From: Macrostomum lignano
Lineage: Eukaryota
NCBI GenBank assembly: GCA_002269645.1
Contig: NIVC01000600.1
Coordinates: 186,001-250,000 of the forward strand
Reading direction: 5' to 3'
DNA: 64,000 nt
The notes under the pieces were generated by a model. It searched no databases and was not told where the DNA came from. It saw only the letters and a list, made by a program, of their open reading frames with translations. Shown here in pieces: positions 43,707 through 64,000 of this stretch; within the stretch, counting starts at the first letter, position 1, and each line of letters begins with the position of its first letter. The position numbers and the translations under genes are program-made.

Positions 43707-43965
43707 ACTCGCAGCTCAGCTCTGCAGTGGAGCAGCTGACCAGACATCGCAGCGAGTTCCGCCTGCCGGAGGCCAGACCAAAATCCGAGCGGTCAACAGC
43801 GGTGGACCTGGCGCTGCTCGGCCCCTACCTGCGCTGCCTGAGTCATGCCGGGGTGCTCAGCGAAGGCTGCGGACCCGCTGCAACCCTGCTGGTGTTCGAC
43901 GCCTCACGGCTGCCAGACTGCGACTCCGTACGGGAATACGACGGAATCATGCTGCAGCTGCTCAC
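43707..43965 (+). CDS. BCH-domain protein, coding exon 3 (start of BCH/CRAL-TRIO-like domain)
   Basis: DLALLGPYLRCLSHAG..TLLVFDASRLP..YDGIMLQL parallels BNIP2 DMKAIEPYKKVISHGG..AIVVFAVCFMP..YRYLMDNL as recalled. Acceptor CCCCAG|AC, donor AC|GTGAGT. Confidence 0.85.
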
Positions 43966-43966
43966 G

Positions 43967-45010: not shown

Positions 45011-45764
45011 AGATGACTCCGGGATGGATTTCCCCGGAGTCTCGGGATATACGTCTTTGGATAATCCCCGCCGAATCTGTACTGCAATAGCCATACAATT
45101 TGCCCTATACTTCGGCGCATTATGAGTGCACACTGGGGACTTAGGAAGCAGTCGAGATAAGAAAAAGGCTCCGCAGACCGACAGTAACCTCTCCGCTTGC
45201 TTATACTTCACTTTCATCCGGCGCAAGGAAGGAAACTCGCCTCGGGGGAGAGTCTGGATGGGAAGAGCGAGGACGGCCCCGTGGGATATGAGAGCGGACA
45301 CAGGGGCGCCCGTGACAGAAACATGGGGGGCTCTGAGTGTGGGATCGGAACTCTGTCTCGTCCGGAGCGGAGCTCTGAGTTAGAAAATGATGCTCATTTT
45401 TTCGCGAGCAGCATCACAAGCCAGCTCTATATTGCCGAGCCTGCCTCTCAGCGCTCCCGCACTTCACCTTTGCCATTTCATTAGATGCTGACTTCTCTTG
45501 ACTCTGAGCATCTGTGAGGCTTACAATGCAATGCCCCGAGCTCAAGTTGCCAGTGAGAGGCACGCGCGAGGGGGTATATTTTCGAGCAATGAGCCAGATG
45601 GAGATACAGATATGTAATTAAAACAGATGCGAACACAGAAAGCATCAACGGCCAGGGCATGCCAAGAGATAAATATTATTAATCTACTGTGGGACCTAAG
45701 TAGTATGAATAGCGTTTCTTAACATTGCTAAAGATTAGTTATTCATCTATTTATTCATCCATAA

Positions 45765-46860
45765 TATGTTGGCTAGATTAGCAATCCATTCTATTCTTTC
45801 ATCCATAATGTGTTGGCTAGATTAGCAATCTATTCTATTCCTTCATCCGTGATTTTGGCTAGATTAGCAATTTATTCTATTCCTTCATCCGCGATGTTGG
45901 CTAGATTAGCAATCAATTCTGTTCCTTCATCCATGATATTGGCTAGATTAGCAATCCGTTATATTCCTTCATCCGTGATGTGTTGGCTAGATTAGCAATC
46001 CATTCTATTCCTTCATCAGTGATGCTGGCTAGATTAGCAATCCGTTATATTCCTTCATCCGCGATGTTGGCTAGATTAGCAATCCATTCTATTCCTTCAT
46101 CAGTGATGCTGGCTAGATTAGCAATCCATTCTATTCCTTCATCCGTGATTTTGGCTAGATTAGCAATTTATTCTATTCCTTCATCCGCGATGTTGGCTAG
46201 ATTGGCAATCCATTCTATTCCTTCATCAGTGATGCTGGCTAGATTAGCAATCCATTCTATTCCTTCATCCGCGATGTTGGCTAGATTGGCAATCCATTCT
46301 ATTCCTTCATCCGTGATGTGTTGGCTAGATTGGCAATCCATTCTATTCCTTCATCCGTGATGTGTTGGCTAGATTAGCAATCCATTCTATTCCTTCATCC
46401 GTGATGTGTTGGCTAGATTAGCAATCCATTCTGTTCCTTCATCCATGATGTGTTGGCTAGATTAGCAATCCATTCTGTTCCTTCATCCATGATGTGTTGG
46501 CTAGATTAGCAATCCATTCTGTTCCTTCATCCGTTATGTTGGCTAGATTGGCAATCCATTCTATTCCTTCATCCGTGATGCTGGCTAGATTAGCAATCCA
46601 TTCTATTCCTTCATCCGCGATGTTGGCTAGATTGGCAATCCCTTCTGTTCCTTTATCCATGATGTGTTGGCTAGATTAGCAATCCATTCTGTTCCTTCAT
46701 CCATGATGTGTTGGCTAGATTAGCAATCCCTTCTGTTCCTTCATCCATGATGTGTTGGCTAGATTAGCAATCCATTCTGTTCCTTCATCCATGATGTGTT
46801 GGCTAGATTAGCAATCCATTTTGTTCCTTCATCCGTGATGTGTTGGCTAGATTAGCAATC
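45765..46860. repeat. 42/44-bp minisatellite (GATGTTGGCTAGATTAGCAATCCATTCTATTCCTTCATCCGC)
   Basis: About 25 units ending ~20 nt before the exon-4 acceptor. Confidence 0.95.
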
Positions 46861-46880
46861 CCCTCCTCTCCCCTCGGCAG

Positions 46881-47093
46881 GCTGCTCAGTCACGCCATCA
46901 GGCAGATCCGCACTCCCAGTTTTGCCTTGGTGTTTCTGCACTCGCCAGCCACTCGCGGCCAGTTCCCCAAGGTGGCCTGGATGAAGCAGGCTGCCGCATG
47001 GCTGGAGACCCAGTCCTCGCTGCGCAGAATCTACGTGCTGCACTCGACCTTCTCACTGAGCACCCTGTCCGTGCTGAGTCGCGCCTTTACCTC
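46881..47093 (+). CDS. BCH-domain protein, coding exon 4
   Basis: FALVFLHSPATRGQFPKVAWMKQ..LRRIYVLHSTFSLSTLSVLSRAFTS parallels BCH [48 protein letters not shown]. Phase-2 splice sites are consistent. Confidence 0.85.
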
Positions 47094-47456
47094 GTGAGTT
47101 TTTACTTACTTTGTTTTAAAAATAAGGTCACTTTGGTAATTCGAATTGGCGCTAAAAAACAAATAATCACGGATATGAGAAGCAGAACCTTTAAATTTAG
47201 ATTTGTTAAAGTCGCCAGAAAAATACTAGAATAGCGTTTTCCAGGTTTTGGTCGCGAGTTCAAAAGTTTTTCACGGGGTTTTTGGTGCGAATTTAACAGG
47301 ATACTTTTTTAATTTAACGGTAACCTAATGGTTACGTGTTTGTTTTGATGTCCAGCTTACAGTATCGCAAAACTTGGAGATATTATCAATTTTTTAGAGG
47401 CATGCGACTTCTTTTAAAATAGAATGCTCTTCTTTAACAAACCATAAACATGACAG

Positions 47457-47598
47457 GCGCGCATTCCGAGACCTCGTGACCAGCGTCTCGTCGGTGCAGC
47501 AGCTGCAGGAGCTTCTGCCGCTCCTGACCACCTCTGTCAAGCAGCAGCTCGAGGCGGTACGCGCTTGGGAGTCCACTCACAAAGGATTTGGATTTTGA
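47457..47598 (+). CDS. BCH-domain protein, last coding exon
   Basis: Acceptor TGACAG|G; RAFRDLVTSVSSVQQLQELLP parallels SKFSQKIRYVFNLAELAELVP; TGA at 47596-47598. The five exons total 1113 nt (370 aa), in frame. Confidence 0.75.
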
Positions 47599-47926
47599 GC
47601 ACCCGATTAAGCAGCATGGCGACAATGACCCTGGTCTGTTATATTCTCAGAAAGTCAAAACGCAAACCAGTTTTGGTCTCTTGTGTTTCACTTCTGTGCA
47701 AAGTCGCTCCGACTCCAAACATTAATTTGTTGTCCTGTCTGCATTATAAAATTTATGAATATCATTTTTTATACTGGCTGCAGGTGTCGTGTTCGGATTA
47801 CCGAAATGGATGGAATGGAATAGGTTTTCGGTACTTTATGTACTTTTCAATGTAGACTTGGTTGGTTTGTTGGTAATCTATTGCTGGGTAGCTTTTGACG
47901 TCGTAAATTTTGCACAATGAAATATT

Positions 47927-48331
<405 letters not shown>

Positions 48332-48859
48332 GTTATTCGCACGCTGCTTCGAAAAATTAAATTGTTCGCGTGTTGGTCCTTGCAATTATTGATAGTATTT
48401 TTCAGGCTGCAAGTATTTCATTTCGGACTTTTAAACCCAATGATTGAAAAATTTAATATCCATTAATCATATTTTTCAACAGTATGGCTATATTCCGTGT
48501 CATTCATCCTACAGAACACTAATTACATTAATTACTAACCTACACTGTCACGTGACTCGATCGATGTGTCACTTAAACCCCACTCTTAGCTTGTTGTCTA
48601 TTTAGTCCTTGACTGCTTTCCCCACACTTCTCATTACGAAAATTTACCGTTTTTAGGCTCAATCGCCGAGTTGTGCGTCGTGTTTGTTTCCTTTGTTGTC
48701 TGAGCTCGAAGGTTTAGAAATACACAAAGAAATGCTGCAGTTCGATGAGGTCCAAATCCTCGATATTTTATTGATTTTTTGTCCATAGCAAAACAAAAAA
48801 TTGACTTTTATTCAATTTACGCTTTGCCGCATTATCACCTGGGAAACGTAGCTTTGGAA

Positions 48860-49070
48860 TGGGGAACCTGTGAGGATGGGAAACGGGGGACCGGTGAGGA
48901 TGGGGAACGGGGGACCGGTGAGGATGGGGAACGGGGGACCGGTGAGGATGGGGAATGAGGGGCCAAGGAGGATTTGGATTCGGGGAACCGGTGAGGATGC
49001 GGAATGGGGAACCGGTGAGGATGGGGAACGGGAAACCGGTGAGGATGGGGAATGGGGGACCGGGGAGGAA
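48860..49070. repeat. 24-bp G-rich minisatellite (GGGGAACGGGGGACCGGTGAGGAT)
   Basis: About 8-9 degenerate units. Confidence 0.9.
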
Positions 49071-49607
49071 TTGGAATAGAAAGCAGTAAGAAAGTTAGCA
49101 CAGTGTGAGGCCGGAAGTTTAGAGCATAGAAGTCACATGCAAAATTAGGAAGAGCATATGCATGTTAAAAGTCCTTTTAGTTTTAGGTCACAAAAATTGT
49201 TGATCGAGTGTATCTTGGTATTTATTTTACTCACTAATAGGATAAGCTATGCACATGATATATAGGCCGAGTGGCACGAATATTATTAGTACAGTAACCC
49301 TACATATTAGTAGCTACTCCTAATGGATGCTCAAACGCATGGGTTAAACTAATCTCGTATTTTCTTTAGTGAGAGTGACGCAATTTAAACCACACCACAG
49401 GCCCTAAGGGCTTATATATCCTACCGATGTATACATGCAAAGGTTTCTAAATTTCTTGTGTTAATGAATTCAATGAGACAGAGTGTATCTTTTTAGTTTA
49501 TCGTACTAACGAATTTGTGGCAAGTTTTGCCAAAGGTTTTTAAAATCAATATTATAGTTAATCCTTGATTTTACGAATCAGGCTTGCGCTTCAACGCCAT
49601 TTAAATT

Positions 49608-51555: not shown

Positions 51556-51691
51556 CTGAGGAATGGGAGGAAGGAAGGTGAATTGGAGTCAGTAGAGGAG
51601 AGGTAAAGTCAACAATGGAGAAGCAGAGTCAGAGAAGCAGAAGTGGAGTCGGGAATCAAGGTGGAGAAGTGAAGTGATCTTAATTTAAGCA

Positions 51692-52240
51692 TGTTATGCC
51701 CAATGTTATTTTTTAGTCTAATGCGAACTTCAGAAGGTTTTTCTATCAGGAAAGTACAGCACATGCTTGTGCACCAGTAAAGATCCTATTGCGTGAAGCG
51801 AACACCAATGAAATGCGTTATAGAAATCATATATATACTAGCGTTCAGTGAGAATGAAGCCTCTCTCCAGTTTTTCCCGGTTCTCGGCTCTCCGCCTCTT
51901 TGCCTCCTCAACTGCTCCGCTAGCTTGCCCCAACAATCGGGCCTGAACTCTAATATCCCGATTTAACAGAGATAAATCCGGACAAACGTCAATTCGTGCA
52001 ACAATATCGATAAGTAGCCTGTGGCTCCATTTTCACTGAATTGCTTAACAAATTTGCGTAATTGCGTGATCAATATCCTATTAGGAATTGCTACTAACAT
52101 TGATTAGTAATAAACATCTTGTTGAAGGTTAGAGATCGAGAGAAACAAATCGAACCTCCGACTTATTTGATTCAACAGAAACATCAACGATCATAGTCAT
52201 CGTCAGAGGGGCACACCCCCGCAACAAAAAAATCTAAAAC
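51692..52240 (+). repeat. Candidate 5' LTR
   Basis: Starts TGTTA (51692 or 51704), TATA-like ATATATATA at ~51830, AATAAA at 52109, ends ..AACA (52226 or 52240) just before a PBS candidate. No second copy in the window to confirm it. Confidence 0.45.
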
Positions 52241-52247
52241 ATTTGAC

Positions 52248-52259
52248 TGGCTCCCCGAC
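52248..52259 (+). other. Candidate primer-binding site (tRNA-Asp)
   Basis: TGGCTCCCCGAC is complementary to a metazoan tRNA-Asp 3' end (..GUCGGGGAGCCA) as recalled; it lies a few nt after ..AAAACA. Confidence 0.55.
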
Positions 52260-54194
52260 CTTGTTTCTCTCCGTAATTTCCTTCAACATGCCCGGCTTCA
52301 ATATGCTGGGGTGAACACCTCCGTGGAGCTGGCTATGAGCTAGTGATGGCATCTTAGAAAGGGTCAGTAAAAAATATAAAAATTAAAAAATTACAAAATA
52401 TAAAAACCAATACAATTTGCAAAACTACAAAAATACTACGTGTATGATTCTCCCAAGCTGTAGAATCGTAGAAAAGATTAGTGTTATTTAATGTTCTTAA
52501 ATTTACAACCTCTAATCGCTCTCCCGCTTCGGAGAACCAGCAGCGAACCAGTCCTCAAACCGGTTCCGATGGGAATCCACCCATTCCCACTATTTACGCC
52601 CTTCTGATATACTTTCTCCGAGTACTTTGCTCGCCTCACCTCAAAGAACGTCAAGTTCACCTTGCTCTTTCTCCACAATCTCACTCTGTTCTATAAATAT
52701 CCTGCCTGGGCGACAAATCCCAACCAGGCAACCAGCATTGTCTCAATCCTTTTTCTATTTTTAGCCTCGCAAAACCAGTTCTCGTCCGGAGAATTCCGCC
52801 TTTACTCCGGCTGGTTCACAGCAGATCTGCATCGTTTTTCGTCTTCTGGAAATTCTAGTTCCATTCCGGTCTGCATCAGTTCACAAACCAGCCTCAACTG
52901 GCCTCAGTTCGCCTCACTCAGTTGGCTAAAACGCCCTATCGGCTCCGCGCCTCACTCAGTTGGCTCAACGCCCTACCACAATTCAGCTGTGATCCGCTCC
53001 AGCTCTTCTCTCCGCTGCAATTCTCATCCCCAGGGATAGAAAGTGAGGGAGAATGATTCTGTCACACCGGTGCGACACTCTCAGTACTCTCAATCTTCTC
53101 TTACCCCAGGGAATTCATTTTTGTTTCAATGGCTGCTCCCCCTCCTTGGGCTTTCCCATCAGAAACCCCCATTGTTCTCTAATGGGAATAATTTCCGTCC
53201 CAAGCTCTTATTTATACTACAATCCGCTTTCCTTCTCCGCAAAGTACAACCTACCACCCTCGTCTACCCATACACCAGCCCTTTAGCCTTCGCAGTCGTT
53301 CAAAATTTCTCAAAACAAAATAAAAATTACGCTGTGATTGCTACCCACCCTCTCCTATTCCCTATTCCTTGTTTCTCAATTTCAAGCAGCCACATCATTT
53401 CTTCATGATTAGCAGCGATAAGCCCGCGGCAATTTGTCCTATACACAGGACCTCTACACCTGCCTTCAGGTAATTATAATTCTATTTTAGTCGGCCGAAT
53501 CTATTTGTCAATTACACACTTAAACCCAGGACTGGTGCTTGGTTCATGCTCATCGTGTTCCAAGTTTGAAGTTTTGGCACGCCACTCATACGCCTCTGCC
53601 TTGCTTCCACAGACTTCTGCAGAGTCTCTTTCGTTCCTTTTACAACAAATTCAAATCGCGTACTCAACACGCATCGCCACATCCGCTGGCATCTTAACCA
53701 CAACTCACCAGCTGAGTTTTCAACGCCAATCCGTTCAATCTCAAAGGCATCAATCAACGCGCACATTGCCGCCTCCGCTGAATCTTCTACCGAAATCTGT
53801 TCAAATTCTAATCAAACTCAATCCAAGGATGAGGCTCAGCTTTTCTTGCTGCTTCTATGAAATATTTTAACCGCTCCACCGCTGAGCTATATTATAATTA
53901 GTACAGGCGCATCAGCCGACTCTACTCAGTTCTACTTTATACAACTGTTCAACACTTGCTCAAAATTGCTCTAAACTCACACTTTTGATAAATGATACTA
54001 CAGCTACCGAAGCTCTACATATTGAAAATTTGCTTATATAAAACAAAAAACTGACCCTGGATAGATGACCGCAAATCACGCTCAGATGCTATTGCTTCGC
54101 GCTATTTCAAATCTTTATTGTTACAAAATTGCGGATTATTTTCAACTCTTAATTGCAAGACCACTCGAAGTAAACCCATTCCACAGATCATTGC

Positions 54195-57100
54195 ATGAAA
54201 TTGCGTTCTGGTACCCAACTCGGACAACAACAACAACAAGAGCCGCCTGCAATATCCACACCAAATTCTGCCGGTGTCGCTGAAAATCCTATTGATATTT
54301 CTGGTGATTCTACTGGCATTTGTGGACATTCTACTGGTATTGGTGGACATTCTACTGGCATTGGAGGACACCATACTGACGACACCCAACAGCAACTAAC
54401 ACAAACAGCTACCCCAGCTACATTTTGCCATCTACCTGGCCTCCATCAAGAAAACACTGCCATCGGCACCAGAGACGAAGAACAACCTTCTGAGTTGTAC
54501 GAGCAGCAACAAGAACAACATCCTCCACAGCCACTTCTGCAACCTGATCATTTGAATCAAAATAACGCCAATATCCAGGAAACTGAGAGCAACGTTACAA
54601 TGGCAGAAGCACTAATGCAACAATTTATCAATGCTGTGCGAGATCAACAAAGACCACACGCTGCAATCCCAGCTAGTACCATCAACGAGATCCGCGAAGG
54701 TCTCAAGGAGATAGATCAACTTCATGATTTTGCCTCTTTCATCATGGAGTATGATCTATCAGCGAGAACTTTTAATCTAGATGAAAACTCAAAGCTTCGC
54801 ATCTTTCCTCGGCTCCTCAACGATCTCCTAAAGATCGAATATGCCGCTCTACCCGCCGAGACACAAAATGACTACACCCAATTAGTTCGGTCTCTGTCCG
54901 ACAGAATAGCGGTACTCACTCTCGGATCCACTTCGGCACTACATCACATCGCCAACCGCCGACAACTCCCGGGTGAGCCATTCATCCAGTACTACACGGA
55001 CATTCGCCGCAAACTTCGTGCCATATACCCAGAAGTCTCGCCACTACCACCCGTGGATGGCGAAAATGCACCGGCTAACCAAGCGGTCATTGACCAACGA
55101 AATGAAATGTTTAACAAAACATTGATCGGCCATATACTAAGTGGCGCTCTACCTCACCTTCGCGTTGAACTACTGCGAAACCCGCTGAATACCGAACAAC
55201 AGCTGCTCAACCAGGCCATTCGCCTTGAACAAATACAGCAGTCTTCACAATTAACGGCCCCAAACAACGTTCCGGCCGATATAGAAAAACGCCTTGCTGC
55301 CTTAGAATGTGGAACCATCAAGCCCAAGCCAATAGTAGCGGCTATTCAAGGCGCTAGCAATACTAGAGAACCACCAACGTGCAAATTCTGCCACAGGATT
55401 GGACACACAACAGATCGATGCTACCAGGATCCTCGAAATGCACGCCAACAAACTGCCAATGCTAGACAACCAAGACAGGCTGACTCTAAGTGGACACGCA
55501 ATCAACCGATTCAAGACCGGTACAGACGAGGCTCCGATGATCCTCGCAGCCGAGACACAGGCTCTCCAGCCAAATACTGCCACTTTCACAACTCGGACAC
55601 CCATGATACCGAAGAATGTCGTACCCTACACGATATTAAACAGGGGAGAACAACAAACAATAACCCACAGCGGTATAATCTAGGCCGGCGCGTACAATTT
55701 CAGCGCAACCCCACTCAACGATATCAACGGGAACGCCACTCTGATTCACCAAACCACGGACGTTCCAGAACACCGTCACCGCGCCCTCCTGCAGCCGGTG
55801 TAAACTCAATTCAGGTTGTCTCGAACGACCCCATGCCACAACTGCCGACTATGGACTCGCCTCAACAAATTGTGCCACCGAACAGCACACCCAGTGCTCC
55901 ACAGCGTCTCACTGAGGTTCCTGTGGCAAAATCAACGGCTACTCCAACCTATGCTTTGGACAGACCAATTGAGTACAAGTTCCATGGCTCGACCAGGCAG
56001 TTTAAGAAATTAATCCGCGACAGTCCATCTACACTGTCAGTCATCCACGTTCAACCGTACACTACGCTATCAGCCGCTCAACCAAAGCTAAGAAAAGATA
56101 TGCTACGTGCCCAGCGACAGCAGGTACACGTAAAAAGACCACTGTCTCAGCAGAAAGGACGTCGACTAACTGGTCTAACGACGCTTCTCGTGACACTCAT
56201 CTGGCTATCGCTATTCCCGACGGTGCAGACAACACCACTGCCATCGAATCCTAAGCAACATCCACTCTACGTGGACACACCAATGCTCTGTCCATTAGAT
56301 GGACCCGTGCGCATCTTCAAGATTCCTCAGCAGATCAGATGCGAACAGTTCACGTCGTCACAGGACGTTACGACACCAGTGCACTTACAGCTCTACTCTA
56401 CTAACCTGGAGCAAACCAGAACACCAGTCAGCTTATGCTTCCGTGAGGAAATCTCGGTTAATTGCCTCCCAATGAGCCAGGTTCTGCGCTCTCTCCGTGA
56501 TGCGTACGTAACCTTACGCCCACTTACAGTCGCCGCACAAGATTGCCAACATTGGACCGAATCATATAACTCACCTGATGGTCAGCTTCAACTGGTTGCC
56601 ACCACTGGAAACTACAAAATCTCTCGCTCCAATACAGGAACCTCCTTCCTCGAAGACTGTTACCATCGCAAGGCACGAACTCAAATAGTTTCAACACTCA
56701 TACAAGGGATAATAGCTTTCGCCTCTCCTAGCAAACCAATGGAATCGTTAGCCTTCTCCATGGCACACTGTAGCTATTCATCTCAAGGCTGCATTATTGA
56801 GACAACCTTTGACAACATGAAACGCTATAACCTACCGACAACTCTCCTTCAAAACGCATGGGACACTCTCGACCCACCGGCGACACAACAACTGACCGTT
56901 ACTGGCCAACGAAAACTGACACTTACGTGGAAAACAACAAGCCGTTCGGACTGTATACTCACGCCATTCCGACAAATTCGAGGTAACATACACTCGGGAT
57001 TCTTCATTAACGAAGAACAGACATTGGCTTTGACCTTTAAATTGCCGCTTCAACCCTTCCGCCTTACCTGCTCAATTGGAACGAAACGACTATATGTTTC

Positions 57101-58832
57101 CGAACAAGAACTGTACGTTGAAGTGCTCGACAACAGAGAAGAAGACTTCTTAAAGTCAATCGCGATTGTGCAATCTACAGCTGATGACACCACGAGCAAC
57201 ACAACACGCTCTGTCAAAGCCGCGGATGCTTTAACAGCTGACAGCAGCTCATCTTCTCGACAGAGCCGTTCACTACCTGACTTATTGGCTACCACAGAAC
57301 AACCGTCAACCACACCGATTCCGACGACAGTTCAAGCTCCAACTATTACGTCTCTACCCTCACAGCAGACGCTTGATACAGCTTCACCTACATCCGAGCC
57401 TACTGTCACTACCACTACAATTAAAAAATCTACTACCACACCTCTAAATCTGGAAATTACAACTCCACCAACTACGACAATAGCGACTAGTACAGTTCAA
57501 ACACCCACAACAACGATGTCGCTTAGAAAACCTCAACACACTACATCTCTTCAACTTAAGTCTACAACTCTACCAACGACAGTAGCCACAACTACAGTTA
57601 CGTCGTATAGTCCGCTAACTACGAAAACGACGACATCTACCGGTATTACCACCGAACAACTAACTCCTGGACCTATGTCTACAACACCTACTACCATACT
57701 GGAACCTGATCCTCTTAATATACCATACCTACACCGCGACCAACCACCAATGCTGGAACATCAGGACAGAATCCGTCGCGCGATTCCACCTCCAGACAAA
57801 ACAGTCAACATCACCAACGCTGAACTCAAGCTATCAGAAAACCTCGTTTCGGCACAGCTTCTCTCCAGTCAACTACAAGGACTTCAATCGAAGACTCTAC
57901 TCGATCTCAAGAAACTACACACTCAACTGACGACTACGCAGTGCAAGATGTACGCTTTGAATCTTCGCTATAGTCGCAACCTATACTATACCAATCCGAC
58001 ACTAGCTGCGCGTCAATTATTCGCTGACAAATTCATTTATGCGCACTCCATCGCTGGCTACATCTTTGTTCACCAATGTAAGCCACTAAGTCAGTTCCAG
58101 TTCGTTCAACCGCGATACTCACGAGACGAATGCTACACAAGACCACCGATACAATTTCAACTCCACAATAAGTCTGTTCTCGGATTCCTCGATACAACGA
58201 CATCGATCATCTCAACAGCAAGACCACCACTAATATCCTGCCGTTACCTACGAGACTACTATCTTCCAAAGGGTGAATTCATCTACAAAGCCACAGCCAA
58301 CTTCAGCTCCTTTAGTCCGATAGAAGCACAAAATAGATCCGACGAAACCTACCTCCTACAGTCCTTATACTCCGACATTAGACAGAGTATCTTCACGCCA
58401 CTTGGAGACGTCAACTACAGCGCTTTACGATCACCAGTAACAATAACTGACATGATGGAAAGTTTCATCCAAACACGTGATTTTCTAATCACTGTCTTTA
58501 AACTAAACAACGCTACTGGACGTCTCCACAAGGATGAATTCAAGCAGTTTGGCCTAAACGCCTTGGAAGCTTACCAGAATCTTTGGACATCTACCTTCTT
58601 CAGTTGGGAAAGATTCCAACAGAATCATATGGAGAAGTTTCTGTTCAGTTCTGCTGTAATTGTCTACGCTGCACTACTAATTTTCCTTTGCAACATTGGT
58701 CGAATCTGCGTTGCCAACACACTAACTTATGGTCGAACACACCGCCTTATGGTAATGCGAACGACCGACCCATCACCGCAACAAAACCGGAGCCCACAGC
58801 GACTTCCTACTACCCCGACCACGTGTCGTTAG
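54195..58832 (+). CDS. gag-env: Gag-Env fusion polyprotein, 1545 aa (Gag ~aa 1-540, linker, internal signal segment, gB-like glycoprotein, TM, tail)
   Basis: CKFCHRIGHTTDRC (CX2CX4HX4C) and CHFHNSDTHDTEEC knuckles. Hydrophobic LTGLTTLLVTLIWLSLFPTVQT (~56166-56230). Cys-patterned ectodomain with several N-X-S/T sequons. TM FLFSSAVIVYAALLIFLCNIG (~58638-58700). No stop between gag and env. Confidence 0.9.
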   Translation: MKLRSGTQLGQQQQQEPPAISTPNSAGVAENPIDISGDSTGICGHSTGIGGHSTGIGGHHTDDTQQQLTQTATPATFCHLPGLHQENTAIGTRDEEQPSELYEQQQEQHPPQPLLQPDHLNQNNANIQETESNVTMAEALMQQFINAVRDQQRPHAAIPASTINEIREGLKEIDQLHDFASFIMEYDLSARTFNLDENSKLRIFPRLLNDLLKIEYAALPAETQNDYTQLVRSLSDRIAVLTLGSTSALHHIANRRQLPGEPFIQYYTDIRRKLRAIYPEVSPLPPVDGENAPANQAVIDQRNEMFNKTLIGHILSGALPHLRVELLRNPLNTEQQLLNQAIRLEQIQQSSQLTAPNNVPADIEKRLAALECGTIKPKPIVAAIQGASNTREPPTCKFCHRIGHTTDRCYQDPRNARQQTANARQPRQADSKWTRNQPIQDRYRRGSDDPRSRDTGSPAKYCHFHNSDTHDTEECRTLHDIKQGRTTNNNPQRYNLGRRVQFQRNPTQRYQRERHSDSPNHGRSRTPSPRPPAAGVNSIQVVSNDPMPQLPTMDSPQQIVPPNSTPSAPQRLTEVPVAKSTATPTYALDRPIEYKFHGSTRQFKKLIRDSPSTLSVIHVQPYTTLSAAQPKLRKDMLRAQRQQVHVKRPLSQQKGRRLTGLTTLLVTLIWLSLFPTVQTTPLPSNPKQHPLYVDTPMLCPLDGPVRIFKIPQQIRCEQFTSSQDVTTPVHLQLYSTNLEQTRTPVSLCFREEISVNCLPMSQVLRSLRDAYVTLRPLTVAAQDCQHWTESYNSPDGQLQLVATTGNYKISRSNTGTSFLEDCYHRKARTQIVSTLIQGIIAFASPSKPMESLAFSMAHCSYSSQGCIIETTFDNMKRYNLPTTLLQNAWDTLDPPATQQLTVTGQRKLTLTWKTTSRSDCILTPFRQIRGNIHSGFFINEEQTLALTFKLPLQPFRLTCSIGTKRLYVSEQELYVEVLDNREEDFLKSIAIVQSTADDTTSNTTRSVKAADALTADSSSSSRQSRSLPDLLATTEQPSTTPIPTTVQAPTITSLPSQQTLDTASPTSEPTVTTTTIKKSTTTPLNLEITTPPTTTIATSTVQTPTTTMSLRKPQHTTSLQLKSTTLPTTVATTTVTSYSPLTTKTTTSTGITTEQLTPGPMSTTPTTILEPDPLNIPYLHRDQPPMLEHQDRIRRAIPPPDKTVNITNAELKLSENLVSAQLLSSQLQGLQSKTLLDLKKLHTQLTTTQCKMYALNLRYSRNLYYTNPTLAARQLFADKFIYAHSIAGYIFVHQCKPLSQFQFVQPRYSRDECYTRPPIQFQLHNKSVLGFLDTTTSIISTARPPLISCRYLRDYYLPKGEFIYKATANFSSFSPIEAQNRSDETYLLQSLYSDIRQSIFTPLGDVNYSALRSPVTITDMMESFIQTRDFLITVFKLNNATGRLHKDEFKQFGLNALEAYQNLWTSTFFSWERFQQNHMEKFLFSSAVIVYAALLIFLCNIGRICVANTLTYGRTHRLMVMRTTDPSPQQNRSPQRLPTTPTTCR

Positions 58833-60148
58833 TACCATTAGTACTTACTTCGCCCTCTAGGAGAAACACAAAGGCGACAGCCCCATCAGCTCCACCTATG
58901 GAACTCGAAGAACGACAGCCAGCTATACCGTCTACTTCTTCACGGACAGATTCAAGACTCTACCCGACACTTCAACACTGGCCGGTTGCCTACAACACCG
59001 TCTTGAAACATCTTACGATGCGAACCCTCATCACGCTCTGGTGCACAAGCCCAAGAATGACCAAATGCAAGTGCACCGCGCTGATTGATAGTGGCGCCTC
59101 TATCTCTTGCGTTTCACCTACCTTCGCACAGAAACTACAGGCTGACATTTTACCCTGTAAAATACGCGTTCAATGTGCAGGAGGACAACTTCTTAACGTA
59201 ACTAAACAGGCTAAATTTAGTATGATCATCGGATCATCAAATCGGAAAATCACAGCTTACATATTGGAGGCTATGCCACCCGATTATGATCTAATTCTCG
59301 GTGTCGAAACCTTTAAATCCCTTGGCATACCACTGTCCATTGACTACGCCAAGTCAGAAGCACAAATCGATGGCACTTCGTTTCCCATATTGAATACTTA
59401 CACAGCAACTGAGGTCGCTGAAGTCTACTTGCCAAAGCAGACTCACATACCCGCTCAATCTACCACCTGGATACAGGCGAATATCGACACGACCTATCCA
59501 AAGCGCCAGCCTGTCCTATTCATACCAAAGGATCATACTATTCAACGCTATAAGCTCTTAATCGCAAGCTGCTTGACGCTTACAGATGAAACGGGTAATT
59601 CGATCCTCATACAGATCGCTAACCCTTCACTACAGCCAGTAACACTCTATGCTCAAACACGATTAGGCAGTCTGTCCGATCCCGCGGAATATACACCTGT
59701 TACTTCAAAACCTACAGCAACAGTCAATACCATCTCTACCTCGCACGCACGACCTGAGACCGACCGCCAGCTAATTGAACAACAAACACGGCCTAACAAT
59801 TCGCATCTGACACCCGAACAAGCTACGAGACTGTGCGACCTACTTTTAGAGTACCGAGATACGCTGGCTCTGTTACCTACGGATATGGGATGCACTACTC
59901 AATATACCGCCACAATTAACGTTCAACCACATACGCATCCAATTACATCGCGACCTTTTCCGATTGCACATGGTCTTCAAGAGCGTTTTGACCAACTGAT
60001 CGAGAATTTCATCCACAAAGGAATACTCAGCCCTAGCGAGTCGGAATACTCAAGCCCATGTCTACTGGTCGAAAAGAAGACACTTGATGAACAAGGACGC
60101 CGCCAATTGCGTCTTGTCGTTGACTTTCGCCGTCTCAACGAATTCTAA
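58583..60148 (+). CDS. pol: Pol part 1: aspartic protease and RT N-terminus, in the -1 frame relative to gag-env; true start unknown
   Basis: ALIDSGAS protease motif; RT start PITSRPFPI..KGILSPSESEYSSPCLLVEKK..RLVVDFRRLNE. The 58583 start is a TTG, not credible as an initiator. Confidence 0.92.
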   Translation: MDIYLLQLGKIPTESYGEVSVQFCCNCLRCTTNFPLQHWSNLRCQHTNLWSNTPPYGNANDRPITATKPEPTATSYYPDHVSLVPLVLTSPSRRNTKATAPSAPPMELEERQPAIPSTSSRTDSRLYPTLQHWPVAYNTVLKHLTMRTLITLWCTSPRMTKCKCTALIDSGASISCVSPTFAQKLQADILPCKIRVQCAGGQLLNVTKQAKFSMIIGSSNRKITAYILEAMPPDYDLILGVETFKSLGIPLSIDYAKSEAQIDGTSFPILNTYTATEVAEVYLPKQTHIPAQSTTWIQANIDTTYPKRQPVLFIPKDHTIQRYKLLIASCLTLTDETGNSILIQIANPSLQPVTLYAQTRLGSLSDPAEYTPVTSKPTATVNTISTSHARPETDRQLIEQQTRPNNSHLTPEQATRLCDLLLEYRDTLALLPTDMGCTTQYTATINVQPHTHPITSRPFPIAHGLQERFDQLIENFIHKGILSPSESEYSSPCLLVEKKTLDEQGRRQLRLVVDFRRLNEF

Positions 60149-62751
60149 CAACACCAAGCATACGCCCGCCACGTATACCGGACCTCCTACTACGCCTACG
60201 CGACGCCAAACTTTATTCGTTGTGCGACCTTGCCGACGCGTTTTACCAAGTCCGACTAGACCCAGACAGCGCCAAATATACCGCCTTCATCGCACCTAAT
60301 GGCCTCCTTTTTCAGTTTAATCGCTTGCCACAGGGTCTGGCCGCATCTCCCAGCCTGATGTGTCGTCTAGTCGCTCTACTCACAGCAGATTCACCTAATC
60401 TTATCGCCTACCTGGACGATGTACTCCTAATCGCAAAGGACTTTAATGGCATGCTGGGTGAACTCAGACATTTCTTGGCGAAACTCCGCCATCACGGTCT
60501 TCGTATCTCGCTTAGAAAATGCACCTTTGCAAAGAACGAAGTACAGTATCTAGGCTTTCAAGTGTCCGAACATGGAATCCGACCGGCACCAGCGCTTGTC
60601 GAAAAAATTAAGAACTTCCCGGAACCTAAGACACCTAAGCAACTGCAGTCCTTCCTCGGACTTGCCAACTTTTATCGCTCGCATGTACAAGGATACTCTA
60701 CGATTGTGACACCATTGCTTCGTGCTCTCAAAGACGCTCTGGCTACAAAAAGTTTGAAATGGACTACTATCACACAGACGGCCTTTGACAACATCCGAAA
60801 GATTCTGTCAACTGATATTATACTAGTACATCCTGATCCTCGAAAGCCCTACGTGCTTCATACGGATGCCTCTGACTACTCTCTTGGTGCAGTCCTCTCT
60901 CAACACGATTCGCGTGGACATCTGCAACCCGTCGCTTACATCTCTAAAACTTTGACTCCGACGGAACAACGTTATCCTGCCATTGAGAGAGAAGCCTATG
61001 CTATCTATTGGGCGATTCGGAAGCTCCATGTTTTCCTATACGCCTCACACCTACCATTTACAGTGTTCACGGATCACCAACCGTTGCAATCTCTGTTCAC
61101 TGACAAACAGCCTCTCTCGAAACGACTGCAAAAGTGGATTCTACATCTACAGGATTACCAATTTTCGATCCACTATATTAAAGGCCGCTCAAACGCTGTA
61201 GCCGACTGCCTGTCCCGTATTCCTAGTGTGAATACTTTACATCCCATCCCAGCCTTTGACAACTTGCACGAAGCAGTAAACCAAGACCCATTCTGTGCGA
61301 CAGTGATAGCCACTCTACAGAACCAAAAAGACGACGTACTAACATCCATGTACAAGAACTTATCGAAAACAGAACAAAAACATCTGACGAAACATCTACA
61401 CCACTTCTACTACACCAACGACACACTCTACTACGATCCATTGGAAGGTGACTCTCGTAGTCCTAACTCGTCGACACCACGTCTGGTGATCCCAACCGCC
61501 TACAGAGACGCTCTCCTTCAGGAATGCCATTCCTCTCCATTTGGAGGACACCTTGGTCTTCAGAAAACCTTGTCCCGACTCAGCAAATTCTACTATTGGC
61601 CCAATTGCCACGCAGACGTGACAAGCTTCGTTAACAAATGCGAGATTTGTCAAAAAGCCAAATCAGGACCTCGACTGCGTTCAGAACAGAAAGCAATGAA
61701 ATTCCGCAGTGTCTTCTCACACCTGGCTATTGATCTTGTAGGACCGTTACCACCGGCTCATTACATGCGAGATGTGTACAAGTACATCTTGACAGCTCAG
61801 TGTGGTGTTAGCAAGTTTCTGTTCACGATACCACTGGCTGATACAACCACGTCTACTATTTGCAACCATTTGTTTCGACATGTCTTCGCGATAGCCGGAC
61901 TTCCGGCCTGTCTGATTTCTGATAATGGACCACAGTTCATTTCCAAGGAGTTCCGCGAGTACATGGACACAATGGGAATCCGACTGATCTACACATCAGT
62001 CTATCAACCATCCAGCAATTTCGTAGAACGTGCCCACCGAAACCTCAAACAGACACTAACTACCTTTGTGCACGACAAGCCCGATCACTGGATCGAATAT
62101 TTGCCAGCAGTGACTCTTGCGTTGAACACCGCAGCCCACACTGCCATGAAGGAATCGCCATTCTACCTGTTCTACGCCCGTGACTTCCTGGCACCCAGCA
62201 CAAGAATCCTCGAAAATCAAATATCGATCTACACCGAGGAAATCCAACCAATCAGCTTGACCTGCTCAGCGATCACATTGGCCAGAGAAATTGCTCTCCA
62301 TCACCTACACTCTACAGCCGATCAACGGGCCCAGAAACAGAACGAAGAAAAAGCCCCTAATGCTCAAAAGCTCACCATAGGCTCCCGCTGTTACTTAGAC
62401 ATATCTGCTACTAAGCTGACAAAGTTCTCTAATCCGTTCCGAGGACCGATGCGAATTCTAAAATGGCTGAGCCCACAGAATGCGCTAATCCAGGATATTA
62501 ATAAGCTGACAGAGCCACCATTCGTAGTCCATGCCTCCAAGCTAAAACGTTCCCCTTTTCAACCACAAGAGGAACTCAATCTGCCGAACTTCACATCATC
62601 GATACCACAGACTCACTTCGACCACCACCCGCCACTGGCACAGCATCACGCTACTCAGACTGACGTCGTGGATGAGCCTGACACTCGTGATCAGCACGGA
62701 CTAGAACCTATTCCAGCTGTGCGATATCATCTGCGCTCACGGGATGTGTGA
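60146..62751 (+). CDS. pol: Pol part 2: RT-RNase H-integrase, continuing after a 1-nt frameshift at ~60145
   Basis: The frame reopens as LTTPSIRPPRIPDLLLRLRDAKLYSLCDLADAFYQV. Motifs LPQGL and YLDD (RT); LHTDASDYSLGAVLSQ, EREAYAI and TDHQPL (RH); H..H..CEIC, IDLVGPLP, SDNGPQF and VERAHR (IN); GPMRI (GPY/F-like). Confidence 0.95.
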
Positions 62752-64000
62752 ATCAATACGCGGCAGTTGATTATCGATGGACAGTTGATTATCGATACGT
62801 TTTGAAAATTATTTTTGTTTATATTATTTCTATTAGTTTTATAATTATATATTATATCTTTCTTCCTCTTAAATCGCAATTTATCATTTTCCGCTTCAAC
62901 TTATATATCTTCGTTAGATAATTTCCTTGACAATACGCTACTCTTTTGCTACTCACAGTAGAAATGTCAGTTCTCAACACTCTTATCAAAATTATTGTTT
63001 TATTCTGTTGTCGTCAAACGCTTTAGCCCTACATTTTATTTGCTTACCTTTAATTACTATCACTCACCCTTGAAAAAATTTATCAGAACCATCTTCTCTA
63101 CTCTTGCTCACCCACGTGAACTCAATGATCTTTTCTTTCGTCACCTCATAATCCCTATTCGGTCTTTTGTAAGACCACGCGTTACCCGGATCTACACAGC
63201 CGTCCCGCTCTACACTGCAATCCGGCTCTACACGCTGCCCTGACCGAAATTCAGCTTCGACTCTGTTCAACACCAACCCGGCCCACTGCCCAGCCCTATC
63301 TACTACTTGGAAACAACCTGCTATGCTCCGAATTAACAGACTACATGCCTGCTACCGACAACTACGGCTAACTACGAACTACGACACCGGCCTGACTACA
63401 GAAACCCTACTGGCTGCAACAAAACTAAGACGAACAGCACTATCTGACACGTGGTGGCCTTGAAAAAGGCCGTTTTGACGTTGGCGCCCAAAGGACGCAG
63501 AAGACTTGGCAGACCAACTGTGCAGTTACACCGCAGTCTCCTGGACACGGGCAGTTGCAGCGGGCCGCAATGGTGCGCGACAACAGCGGCTGCAGCCGCC
63601 AAAGCAGCAGCAACACTTGCAGCAACAACAGCAGGCTACAAACGCCGCCACTAGCAGTAACAGCAGCAGCAGCATGATGGCGACGACCGCGCTGATGGAA
63701 ATGAAATACGCGTGACGCCCCTGGAGAATACCAGCCGCGATCTCTGTAATTTGCTCTCTTCCCAAAGACAGACCAGCCATTGACTAATCTAACTTGAATG
63801 ATAAACGAGCTATATCGAAACTTAAAAACAATTGCGGACAAAACCTGAACTAGAAAATTCCCTCCCTATCGTTTTTTATCTTATTTATACCACGCGACTC
63901 CATCCTTTCCTTTGAATTAGCTTCAGTGTACACTCACGCGCTCTACGAACACCCACCCCAAGCCAATAATCTCTTCGACCCCACGTACAATGTACATTCT

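What the first reader, a model, noticed from the sequence alone, without database searches (positions are those of the whole stretch)
54195..62751. Ty3/gypsy retroelement with gag-ENV-pol order: a membrane-spanning Gag-Env-Pol polyprotein
Seen: env lies between gag and pol and is fused in frame to gag (one 1545-aa ORF). Pol follows directly after the Env TM in the -1 frame. The three ORFs step frame 0 to -1 to -1, so restoring two single bases gives one ORF of about 2850 aa. Established: env-bearing retroviruses and errantiviruses normally put env last, on a separate spliced mRNA. Inference: two hydrophobic segments (internal signal at ~56166-56230, TM at ~58638-58700) leave Gag cytosolic, Env luminal and the tail plus PR-RT-RH-IN cytosolic. 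That resembles the capsid-signal-envelope polyproteins of alpha- and flaviviruses, grafted onto a retroelement. Env stoichiometry would be coupled to Gag, and Gag and Pol would start out membrane-tethered. I do not recognise this layout from described elements.
Basis: partly seen in the sequence, partly recalled or inferred. Interest (0 to 1): 0.95.

Follow-up and report, generated by a model that had tools for sequence, protein, structure and literature searches.

The report
Flatworm retroelement with Gag-Env-Pol polyprotein
This is a slightly damaged copy of a young, multi-copy retrovirus-like element of the flatworm Macrostomum lignano that carries a herpesvirus-gB-like envelope gene between gag and pol in one reading frame; the layout is real and conserved, but the gag-env-pol kind has already been described in flatworms and nematodes.

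Summary
The window has ORFs of 1545, 521 and 843 aa in frames 0, -1, -1, reading Gag (Ty3-type capsid, CCHC knuckle), hydrophobic segment, Env, membrane anchor, then PR-RT-RNaseH-IN.

The window is 99.7% identical to Macrostomum lignano contigs. Four sibling loci there carry the same element as one uninterrupted 2852- or 2859-aa ORF between 577-nt LTRs. The window's two frame steps are therefore copy-specific frameshifts, not part of the design.

Env is a class III fusion glycoprotein. Its family profile hits herpesvirus gB (E 3e-18), the AlphaFold model matches only gB in the top 50 PDB hits listed, and 13 of 20 relatives match Pfam Monjiviricetes_fusion.

Gag-Env and Env-PR continuity recurs in distant relatives (Meloidogyne, Ditylenchus, metagenome contigs), including a 2327-aa uninterrupted ORF.

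The layout is not new. GAG-ENV-POL Ty3/gypsy elements with gB-type Env are published for Platyhelminthes, Nematoda and Bryozoa (Chary & Hayashi, eLife 2026; Sacco 2022). A single Gag-Pol-Env polyprotein is known from the nematode Atlas virus.

The membrane-spanning polyprotein topology is a well-supported inference but untested. Verdict: new member of a known kind, moderate interest.

The parts
51670..52246 (+). 5' LTR (577 nt), starts TG
   Evidence: It matches both LTRs of each of four M. lignano sibling loci at 98.4-99.6%. In L004 the two LTRs are 99.3% identical to each other. The 3' LTR of the window copy would begin about 460 nt beyond the window end.
52248..52263 (+). primer-binding-site-like TGG... 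sequence, one base after the LTR
   Evidence: Read directly from the sequence. No tRNA gene in the window was available to match it, so the assignment is by position only.
52247..54194 (+). long 5' leader (1.95 kb), no recognisable coding content
   Evidence: Three 121-125-aa ORFs lie in the polyprotein's frame but have no Pfam hit. The leader is not conserved in the divergent M. lignano relatives L001 and L002.
54195..62751 (+). polyprotein gene Gag-Env-PR-RT-RNaseH-IN. It is broken in this copy by 2 frameshifts and has no premature stops otherwise. Gag and Env through its membrane anchor are intact; both breaks fall in the tail/pol part.
   Evidence: Searches give the window ORFs and their match to P0121. 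One search counts the differences from L004: 7 substitutions and two one-base length differences. Siblings L004, L009, L010 and L011 hold one uninterrupted 8559- or 8580-nt ORF.
54585..55394 (+). Gag capsid-like region (Ty3/PNMA/Arc type)
   Evidence: The profile of the window Gag plus 8 relatives (A2) hits Ty3 Gag 6r22 at E 6.7e-9, as well as PNMA2 and Arc. Six of the 9 members match Pfam Retrotrans_gag.
55380..55619 (+). nucleocapsid region with one CCHC knuckle and one CHHC variant
   Evidence: Motif scan. The A2 profile hits retroviral NC structures.
56169..56225 (+). internal hydrophobic segment (aa 659-677), predicted internal signal sequence
   Evidence: Kyte-Doolittle scan. The 15 residues before it hold 5 K/R and no D/E. 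An equivalent segment precedes the conserved PM[IL]C motif in all fused relatives.
56226..57194 (+). Env ectodomain, N-terminal half (gB domain I/II-like)
   Evidence: Most 10-residue blocks of the AlphaFold model have mean pLDDT of 70-93 here. The A1 profile aligns to the EBV gB N-terminal domain. Foldseek matches gB.
57195..57842 (+). mucin-like S/T/P-rich disordered insert, with a single furin-like RIRR at 57768-57779
   Evidence: pLDDT is below 50. The S/T/P-rich core of this stretch (aa 1011-1195) is 53% S+T+P, and there is one R-X-[KR]-R motif. Relatives skip most of this stretch in the alignment.
57843..58640 (+). Env ectodomain, C-terminal half (gB domain III-V-like, long central helix)
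   Evidence: The A1 profile against EBV, VZV and HCMV gB gives E 2.7e-18 to 1e-5. The model has a helix at residues 571-617.
58641..58709 (+). Env membrane anchor (aa 1483-1505), followed by a short tail that continues into Pol in the siblings
59069..59317 (+). aspartic protease domain (DSGAS)
   Evidence: Pfam Asp_protease_2 and gag-asp_proteas.
60098..60564 (+). reverse transcriptase domain
   Evidence: Pfam RVT_1 in the window ORF and in sibling P0121.
60760..61158 (+). RNase H domain
   Evidence: Pfam RT_RNaseH and RT_RNaseH_2.
61489..62010 (+). integrase: H2C2 zinc-binding domain plus catalytic core
   Evidence: Pfam Integrase_H2C2 and rve.
62752..64000 (+). 3' non-coding part of the element, cut by the window end
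   Evidence: It aligns with L004 up to the window end. It has no Pfam hit.

Best explanation
Window 51670-64000 holds most of one insertion of a young, multi-copy LTR retroelement of Macrostomum lignano. The element is about 13.4 kb and is of Ty3/gypsy (Metaviridae) type. It belongs to the already described group of elements that carry a herpesvirus-gB-like (class III) envelope glycoprotein between gag and pol.

In intact siblings, Gag, Env, PR, RT, RNase H and IN form one 2852-aa reading frame. The window copy has two frameshifts after the Env membrane anchor, so it is a broken or mis-assembled copy.

The most likely mode of expression is inferred, not shown:
1. The full-length RNA is translated from the Gag start codon.
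2. Gag is made in the cytosol.
3. The internal hydrophobic segment, which has a positively charged N-flank, acts as an internal signal. It takes the nascent chain to the ER and is probably cut by signal peptidase.
4. The Env ectodomain is translocated, glycosylated and cut at the RIRR site.
5. The second hydrophobic segment stops transfer.
6. PR-RT-RH-IN is made on the cytosolic side and freed by the element's own protease.

Gag, Env and Pol would thus be made in equal amounts and start out at the same membrane.
For: Identity of the element:
- The window is 99.7% identical over 12.3 kb to M. lignano contig NIVC01000270.1.
- LTR pairs flank the element at four sibling loci. The L004 copy also shows a TGG... 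site one base after its 5' LTR, a purine-rich tract before its 3' LTR and a possible 4-bp target duplication.
- Domain order is PR-RT-RH-IN.
- Gag is of Ty3 type.

Single ORF:
- Four loci have no internal stop in 8559 or 8580 nt. Flanks differ between L009, L011 and the window.

Env is a class III fusogen:
- The family profile hits EBV gB at E 2.7e-18 and VZV and HCMV gB as well.
- Pfam Monjiviricetes_fusion matches 13 of 20 relatives, BDV_G 5 and Glycoprotein_B 4.
- Foldseek against the PDB lists only gB in its top 50, at E about 1e-13 and probability 1.0.
- Foldseek against BFVD gives nyami-, rhabdo- and chu-like G proteins at E down to 2e-21, and gB.

The fused design is conserved:
- The divergent M. 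lignano family L001 has the same order at 41-64% aa identity.
- The uninterrupted 2327-aa ORF in L005 reads CCHC, hydrophobic segment, Env, TM, PR, RT, RH, IN.
- Meloidogyne enterolobii P0176 (1932 aa) reads gag-env-PR-RT-RH-IN.
- At least 12 representatives at or below 50% identity (P0125, P0129, P0133, P0135, P0137, P0141, P0144, P0145, P0149, P0167, P0176, P0184) join gag or a CCHC-bearing N-terminal part to env. At least six (P0137, P0149, P0150, P0155, P0163/P0184, P0169) join env to PR or PR-RT.

Topology cues:
- The polyprotein has only two hydrophobic segments.
- The N-flank of the first is net positive in 10 of 11 fused relatives.
- 7 of 11 have no Met within 40 aa upstream, so Env cannot start there on its own.
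Against: - No transcript or protein data were available. Translation of the whole frame, signal-peptidase cleavage and furin cleavage are all inferred.
- DeepTMHMM and SignalP could not be run; only a hydropathy scan was done.
- The M. lignano element does have a Met 25 residues before the hydrophobic core. A separately initiated Env with an ordinary N-terminal signal peptide is therefore possible on a spliced or trans-spliced RNA.
- An equimolar Gag:Pol ratio is unusual for retroelements, although single-ORF elements exist.
- TM-scores of the monomer model to gB are low (0.25-0.36), so the domain arrangement is not well modelled.
- One relative (L006) has an in-frame stop between PR and RT, so full continuity is not universal.
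Confidence: 0.8

Rival explanations
1. The element is as described, but Env and Gag-Pol are made from separate processed RNAs. Env would come from a spliced or spliced-leader trans-spliced subgenomic mRNA starting at the Met just upstream of the hydrophobic segment. Gag-Pol would come from an RNA with env spliced out. The open frame across the junctions would then be tolerated rather than used.
For: - The M. lignano copy has a Met 25 aa before the hydrophobic core. That would give a standard N-terminal signal peptide.
- Stand-alone Env proteins with N-terminal signal peptides exist among the relatives, for example P0132, P0148, P0160 and P0164.
- From established knowledge, retroviruses and Drosophila errantiviruses express env from spliced RNA, and flatworms and nematodes use spliced-leader trans-splicing.
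Against: - 7 of 11 fused relatives lack any Met within 40 aa upstream of the segment.
- Frame continuity gag-env-pol is kept in lineages sharing only about 20-35% Env identity. That would not be expected if the junctions were untranslated.
- No splice evidence could be examined.
Confidence: 0.25
2. The two -1 frame steps in the window are programmed ribosomal frameshift sites that lower the amount of Pol, as in many retroviruses.
For: In the window copy, Pol starts in the -1 frame with an overlap of about 250 nt onto the first ORF. That looks superficially like a gag-pol overlap.
Against: - Four sibling loci that are 99.5-99.8% identical have everything in one frame with no internal stop.
- The window differs from L004 over the coding region by exactly two one-base length differences.
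- The second step interrupts a catalytic domain of pol, which no programmed site would do.
Confidence: 0.02
3. The env segment is a one-off insertion or an assembly chimera inside an ordinary gag-pol element.
For: None was found beyond the unusual position of env.
Against: - The same arrangement occurs at four other M. lignano loci and in a divergent M. lignano family (L001).
- It also occurs in nematode proteins and in independent metagenome contigs.
- It is published for three phyla.
Confidence: 0.01
4. The locus is a domesticated host gene in which a captured fusogen is used by the worm.
For: Intact class III fusogen ORFs are sometimes co-opted. Env is intact in this copy through its membrane anchor.
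Against: - The element is multi-copy and near-identical, flanked by LTRs, with different flanks at different loci.
- Env is in frame with an intact PR-RT-RH-IN in the siblings.
- The window copy itself is broken in pol.
Confidence: 0.03

Closest known systems
GAG-ENV-POL Ty3/gypsy 'errantiviruses' with HSV/gB-type ENV in Platyhelminthes, Nematoda and Bryozoa (Chary & Hayashi, eLife 2026, PMC13524379; bioRxiv 2023.10.26.564294)
   Same: - Ty3/gypsy pol.
- gB-type class III Env placed between gag and pol.
- The ectodomain can be flanked by two transmembrane segments.
- The furin site is not always conserved.
- Multi-copy, near-identical insertions with LTRs.
- The host phylum includes flatworms.
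   Different: - The main text never mentions a fused reading frame or polyprotein: the terms 'polyprotein', 'fused', 'single ORF', 'in-frame' and 'frameshift' each occur 0 times.
- It names no flatworm species. 'Macrostomum' occurs 0 times and the supplements are not held. I therefore cannot tell whether this very element is in their set.
- The mucin-like insert is not mentioned.
Nematode endogenous retroviruses with a captured RNA-virus glycoprotein gene (Sacco et al. 2022, J Gen Virol 103:001739; known here only through its citation in PMC13524379)
   Same: - Env lies before pol.
- The glycoprotein resembles those of negative-strand RNA viruses.
- Meloidogyne proteins of this kind are direct relatives of the window's Env. 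These are the P0144 cluster, including the 1932-aa P0176 reading gag-env-PR-RT-RH-IN.
   Different: - The host phylum is different.
- Env identity is only about 20-30%.
- The paper itself could not be read, so I cannot say how far it describes a continuous reading frame.
Atlas virus and Cer13 (Belpaoviridae, nematodes; Merchant et al. 2022, PMC9094657)
   Same: An intact LTR element that encodes Gag, Pol and Env as one polyprotein of about 2830 aa, without stops or introns. Env is therefore fused to the replication proteins and must be released by processing.
   Different: - The order is Gag-Pol-Env, not Gag-Env-Pol.
- The RT is of BEL/Pao type.
- Env is a phlebovirus GN-GC-like class II fusogen.
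- Pol is not downstream of a membrane anchor.
Drosophila errantiviruses (gypsy, ZAM, Idefix)
   Same: Ty3/gypsy pol, LTRs, and a captured viral fusion glycoprotein.
   Different: - Env is last, is a separate ORF and is made from a spliced RNA (established knowledge).
- Env is the baculovirus/paramyxovirus F type (class I), not gB-like.
Herpesvirus gB and glycoproteins of Monjiviricetes (nyami-, chu-, rhabdo-like viruses)
   Same: Sequence-profile and fold-level similarity over both ectodomain halves, a central long helix, a C-terminal membrane anchor, and a basic cleavage site between the halves as in EBV, VZV and HCMV gB.
   Different: - It is encoded inside a retroelement polyprotein.
- It has an S/T/P-rich insert of about 200 aa.
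- Sequence identity to gB is about 8-11% in the structural alignments.
Capsid-signal-envelope polyproteins of flaviviruses and alphaviruses
   Same: Functional analogy only. A cytosolic capsid protein is followed, in the same polyprotein, by an internal signal sequence and a luminal envelope protein, with further cytosolic proteins after a membrane anchor.
   Different: There is no homology: these are RNA viruses with class II fusogens and different proteases. Here the analogy rests on hydropathy and charge only.

Membership tests
Ty3/gypsy (Metaviridae) LTR retroelement | Direct long terminal repeats flanking the coding region | tested here: met
   The 577-nt LTR is present at both ends of four sibling loci. 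In L004 the two LTRs are 99.3% identical to each other. The window holds only the 5' LTR, because it ends before the 3' LTR.
Ty3/gypsy (Metaviridae) LTR retroelement | Pol domain order PR-RT-RNaseH-IN with Ty3/gypsy-type domains | tested here: met
   Pfam finds Asp_protease_2, RVT_1, RT_RNaseH(_2), Integrase_H2C2 and rve in that order. The nearest Pol relatives are gypsy-type. No RT phylogeny was built.
Ty3/gypsy (Metaviridae) LTR retroelement | Gag with Ty3-type capsid fold and CCHC nucleocapsid | tested here: met
   Profile A2 hits Ty3 Gag 6r22 (E 6.7e-9), PNMA2, Arc and NC knuckles. The window Gag alone has no Pfam hit. A CCHC motif is at 55380-55421.
Ty3/gypsy (Metaviridae) LTR retroelement | tRNA primer-binding site and polypurine tract | tested here: inconclusive
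   TGGCTCCCCGACC lies one base after the LTR, and a purine-rich tract lies before the 3' LTR of L004. No tRNA was available to match.
GAG-ENV-POL gB-type errantivirus-like elements (Chary & Hayashi 2026; Sacco 2022) | env located between gag and pol | tested here: met
GAG-ENV-POL gB-type errantivirus-like elements (Chary & Hayashi 2026; Sacco 2022) | Env of the HSV/gB (class III) type | tested here: met
   Profile against PDB gB at E 2.7e-18. Foldseek top 50 PDB hits listed are all gB. Pfam Monjiviricetes_fusion, BDV_G and Glycoprotein_B match in relatives. The window Env alone scores only E 0.075 against Glycoprotein_B.
GAG-ENV-POL gB-type errantivirus-like elements (Chary & Hayashi 2026; Sacco 2022) | Ectodomain flanked by a signal peptide or TM and a C-terminal TM | tested here: met
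   The hydropathy scan finds two segments, aa 659-677 and 1483-1505.
GAG-ENV-POL gB-type errantivirus-like elements (Chary & Hayashi 2026; Sacco 2022) | Presence of this very element or host species in the published data set | not testable with these tools
   The supplementary files are not held. 'Macrostomum' is absent from the main text of both versions.
Class III viral fusion glycoproteins (gB / rhabdovirus G / Monjiviricetes G) | Five-domain fold with central helix and fusion-loop domain | tested here: met
   The AlphaFold model has most 10-residue blocks outside the insert at mean pLDDT 70-93. Foldseek probability is 1.0 to gB over about 800 columns, but TM-scores are 0.25-0.36. Fusion loops and the trimer were not examined.
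Class III viral fusion glycoproteins (gB / rhabdovirus G / Monjiviricetes G) | Membrane-fusion activity | not testable with these tools
   No functional data were available.
Belpaoviridae Gag-Pol-Env polyprotein elements (Atlas, Cer13) | BEL/Pao-type RT and phlebovirus-like class II Env at the C-terminus | tested here: not met
   Pol domains and the nearest relatives are gypsy-type. Env is class III and lies before pol. Only the single-ORF principle is shared.
Flavivirus/alphavirus-type structural polyprotein (analogy, not membership) | Internal signal sequence after the capsid protein, cleaved by signal peptidase | tested here: inconclusive
   A hydrophobic core with a positively charged N-flank and a small-residue C-flank is present and conserved. 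Cleavage cannot be tested here, and no signal-peptide predictor was available.

The most novel reading that the evidence does not exclude
The single uninterrupted Gag-Env-Pol frame is really translated as one membrane-spanning polyprotein. In that protein, a luminal class III fusogen is bracketed by cytosolic Gag and cytosolic Pol. This would be the conserved expression strategy of a whole clade of gB-bearing Ty3/gypsy elements from flatworms to nematodes. It would amount to a flavivirus-like way of making a reverse-transcribing element, with equimolar Gag, Env and Pol made at the same membrane. The order gag-env-pol is published. This reading of it as one polytopic polyprotein does not appear in the papers I could read.
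Probability: 0.55. Interest if true: 0.65.

Novelty: new member of a known kind. Interest (0 to 1): 0.45.

Why it matters
The element shows that a retrovirus-like element can carry its envelope gene inside the gag-pol reading frame rather than behind it. Intact siblings and distant relatives keep that frame open.

If the frame is translated as such, capsid, envelope and replicase are made in fixed 1:1:1 amounts at one membrane. That differs from the spliced-env, frameshifted-pol scheme of retroviruses. It bears on how envelope genes were captured from negative-strand RNA viruses or herpes-like viruses.

M. lignano is a laboratory flatworm with transcriptomic resources, so the transcript and protein products of this family can be described directly.

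For genome annotation, the 2852-aa 'hypothetical proteins' of M. lignano can be labelled as Gag-Env-Pol polyproteins. Several database entries turn out to be chimeric gene models or mis-binned eukaryotic contigs.

Tried and rejected
Searches that found nothing or failed:
- A single-sequence search of the 1545-aa ORF in the word-indexed 5.8-billion-protein database found nothing. The index-free search then found 49 relatives.
- phmmer of Env alone against the PDB found nothing. Pfam on the first ORF found nothing. Only family profiles and the structure model revealed gB and Ty3 Gag.
- An LTR search inside the window found no pair, because the 3' LTR lies beyond the window end. The LTRs were defined from sibling locus L004.
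- The profile search of the large database with alignment A1 failed twice on time-out, so no wider taxonomic census was made.
- Sacco et al. 2022 is not held. The supplements of the eLife paper are not held. A search for 'gag-env-pro-pol' found no paper.
- A tRNA scan of the window found none.
- The 5' leader and 3' region show no similarity to the divergent M. lignano relatives and no Pfam domain.

Explanations considered and rejected:
- Programmed -1 frameshifting.
- An assembly chimera or one-off insertion.
- A domesticated host gene.
See the rival explanations.

The single-ORF state was read from existing database loci only.

Full report
**1. What is in the window**

One search confirms three + strand ORFs between 54195 and 62751, of 1545, 521 and 843 aa.

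The first ORF reads as follows:
- a low-complexity N-terminus with a 21-nt coding repeat;
- a Gag-like region with a CX2CX4HX4C knuckle at 55380-55421 and a CHHC variant at 55578-55619;
- a hydrophobic segment at aa 659-677;
- a cysteine-containing domain;
- an S/T/P-rich stretch (53% S+T+P);
- a single RIRR motif;
- a second domain that opens with a long helix;
- a strongly hydrophobic segment at aa 1483-1505;
- a tail of about 40 aa.

The two downstream ORFs carry Asp_protease_2, RVT_1, RT_RNaseH, Integrase_H2C2 and rve in that order. An open frame of 1545 codons at 47% G+C cannot arise by chance.

**2. Whose element it is, and its true extent**

The best Pol relatives are Macrostomum lignano proteins at 64% identity. 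The index-free search with Env then returned a 2852-aa M. lignano protein, P0121 = PAA86625.1, that is 100% identical over the Env query. Across the three window frames P0121 is 99.5-99.9% identical to the window.

Its locus L004 (contig NIVC01000270.1) aligns with window 51670-63999 at 99.7% over 12.3 kb. L004 has 577-nt direct repeats at both ends that are 99.3% identical to each other.

The window therefore holds:
- the 5' LTR (51670-52246);
- a TGG... site one base after it;
- a 1.95-kb leader;
- the coding region;
- 1.25 kb of 3' sequence.
The 3' LTR lies about 460 nt beyond the window end. L004 also shows a purine-rich tract before its 3' LTR and a possible 4-bp target duplication.

The flank of the window copy differs from those of the database loci, so this is a separate insertion.

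**3. The frame steps are lesions, not design**

L004, L009, L010 and L011 each contain one ORF of 8559 or 8580 nt with no internal stop, and each is flanked by two LTRs. The flanks of L009, L011 and the window differ. Those of L004 and L010 are alike and may be duplicates.

Over the coding region, the window differs from L004 by 7 substitutions and two one-base length differences. In this copy the polyprotein gene is thus broken by two frameshifts and nothing else. Gag and Env through its membrane anchor are intact, and both breaks fall in the tail/pol part. Whether they are mutations or assembly errors cannot be told without the reads.

**4. What Env is**

Alone, the Env sequence hits nothing in Pfam or the PDB. 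I aligned it with 19 Env regions of relatives (alignment A1). The results were:
- The A1 profile hits herpesvirus gB in the PDB: EBV BALF4 at E 2.7e-18, then VZV and HCMV. Each match has two stretches, covering the N-terminal domain and the central-helix/crown region.
- 13 of the 20 members match Pfam Monjiviricetes_fusion, 5 match BDV_G and 4 match Glycoprotein_B.
- The AlphaFold model built on A1 has most 10-residue blocks at mean pLDDT 70-93 outside the S/T/P-rich insert, which is disordered.
- Foldseek against the PDB lists only herpesvirus gB in its top 50, at E about 1e-13 and probability 1.0. TM-scores are low (0.25-0.36), as expected for a monomer model with a 200-residue disordered insert.
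- In BFVD the best matches are glycoproteins of nyami-, rhabdo- and chu-like viruses, including nematode-associated ones, at E down to 2e-21. Entomopoxvirus proteins and gB follow.

Env is a class III fusion glycoprotein.

The RIRR site lies between the two halves, where EBV, VZV and HCMV gB have their furin site (established knowledge). Relatives lack most of the S/T/P-rich insert.

**5. What Gag is**

A profile of the window's Gag with eight relatives (A2) hits the Ty3 capsid (6r22, E 6.7e-9), PNMA2, Arc and retroviral nucleocapsid knuckles. Six of the nine members match Pfam Retrotrans_gag. The N-terminal third of the polyprotein is a Ty3-type Gag.

**6. Is the fused design conserved?**

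Yes.
- A divergent M. lignano family (L001) has gag, env N-half, env C-half, PR and RT in the same order at 41-64% aa identity. That copy is degenerate.
- Among representatives at or below 50% identity found with Env, at least 12 join gag or a CCHC-bearing N-terminal part to env. These are P0125, P0129, P0133, P0135, P0137, P0141, P0144, P0145, P0149, P0167, P0176 and P0184.
- At least six join env to PR or PR-RT: P0137, P0149, P0150, P0155, P0163/P0184 and P0169.
- P0184 is an uninterrupted 2327-aa ORF on a metagenome contig (L005). It reads CCHC, hydrophobic segment, Env, TM, PR, RT, RH, IN.
- P0176 of Meloidogyne enterolobii (1932 aa) reads gag-env-PR-RT-RH-IN. P0167 of Ditylenchus destructor joins a CCHC region to Env.
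- L006 has Gag-Env-PR, then a single in-frame stop, then RT-RH-IN.
- The closest Pol relative outside Macrostomum (L007, 32% identity) instead has gag, pol and then an 834-aa ORF. The N-terminal part of that ORF matches the Env family profile (hhalign probability 94.8%). Env position therefore varies between lineages.

**7. How it most likely works**

Shown:
- There is one frame in the intact copies.
- Only two hydrophobic segments exist in 2852 aa.
- The first has a net-positive N-flank (5 K/R, no D/E in 15 residues). It is followed by small residues and the conserved PM[IL]C start of the ectodomain.
- The same pattern occurs in the fused relatives, and 7 of 11 have no Met within 40 residues upstream.

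Inferred:
- The first segment is an internal signal with its N-terminus in the cytosol, cleaved by signal peptidase.
- Env is translocated, N-glycosylated at up to 7 sequons, probably O-glycosylated in the S/T/P-rich insert, and cut at RIRR.
- The second segment is a stop-transfer anchor.
- Pol is cytosolic and is freed by the element's protease, which would also have to release Gag from its C-terminal anchor.
- Gag, Env and Pol would then be equimolar and co-localised at one membrane.

The analogy with the capsid-signal-envelope polyproteins of flavi- and alphaviruses is functional only.

The main rival is separate expression of Env and of an env-less Gag-Pol from spliced or trans-spliced RNAs. 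The M. lignano copy does have a Met 25 residues before the hydrophobic core. I give that rival about 0.25.

**8. Comparison with what is known**

The order gag-env-pol is not new.
- They also state that such elements are not monophyletic in Pol, and that the ectodomain can be flanked 'by two transmembrane domains'.
- They credit Sacco et al. 2022 with the first nematode cases. I could not read that paper.
- A single Gag-Pol-Env polyprotein of 2828 aa without stops is published for the nematode belpaovirus Atlas (PMC9094657).

What I did not find in the texts I could read is an explicit statement that Gag, Env and Pol of these Ty3/gypsy elements form one reading frame, or any discussion of the resulting membrane topology. 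The terms 'polyprotein', 'fused', 'single ORF', 'in-frame' and 'frameshift' are absent from the eLife main text.

No flatworm species is named there, and the supplements are not held. The M. lignano element may or may not already be in their tables.

**9. Verdict**

The claim of an undescribed layout is wrong, and the frame steps are damage to this copy.

It is a new, or newly characterised, member of a known kind. The single-ORF, membrane-spanning polyprotein reading is the part that still deserves descriptive follow-up. Interest 0.45.

Noticed in passing
window 52247-54194: The 5' leader is unusually long (1.95 kb). It contains three ORFs of 121-125 aa in the same frame as the polyprotein, separated by a few stops. 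They have no Pfam hit and no similarity in the divergent relatives L001 and L002.
   Followed up: partly
window 54307-54370: A 21-nt tandem repeat (3 copies) encodes GHSTGIG units at the Gag N-terminus. Sibling P0171 is 7 aa longer (2859 aa), and its domain coordinates are already shifted by 7 at the start of Gag. That is compatible with one extra unit, but I did not check it.
   Followed up: no
window 57195-57842: An S/T/P-rich (mucin-like) disordered insert of about 200 aa lies between the two Env halves. It is missing from most relatives, whose alignments jump across it.
   Followed up: partly
window 18461-37580: A large composite satellite alternates arrays of a 30-nt unit (about 20-26 copies each) with arrays of 128/261/388-nt units. 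The pattern repeats about every 1.4-2.3 kb for 19 kb. It produces many spurious ORFs.
   Followed up: no
window 9780-10847 (- strand): A 355-aa ORF has Tc1/mariner-type transposase domains: HTH_48, HTH_Tnp_Tc3_2, DDE_3 and Transposase_1. A C2H2 zinc-finger ORF lies next to it at 8309-9022.
   Followed up: no
window 2364-17000 and 38720-49100: There is a dense series of unrelated minisatellites with periods 11, 15, 17, 21, 22, 24, 29, 33, 44 and 48, and a (TCTG)n run at 47927-48333. Some show strong strand skew. The element sits in a repeat-rich region.
   Followed up: no
L006 13506-13514: In a distant relative from an ENA metagenome assembly, Gag-Env-PR and RT-RH-IN are in the same frame, separated by a single stop codon. 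This is either stop read-through or a nonsense mutation.
   Followed up: partly
L007 5466-7970: The closest Pol relative outside Macrostomum (32% identity) has the usual order gag-pol-ORF3. The N-terminus of its 834-aa ORF3 resembles the Env family (hhalign 94.8%), and it has a weak Ricin_B_lectin hit in the middle.
   Followed up: partly
database proteins P0125, P0123, P0126: P0125 (gag-env fusion) is deposited as a protein of a 'Kangiellaceae bacterium' MAG, which is most likely a mis-binned eukaryotic contig. P0123 (3074 aa) and P0126 (3187 aa; named M. lignano) look like chimeric gene models joining element parts to glycosyl-hydrolase or laminin domains.
   Followed up: no
L004 and L010, 5' flanks: Two of the four intact M. 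lignano loci have nearly the same flanking repeat sequence. They may be duplicated or allelic contigs rather than independent insertions.
   Followed up: no
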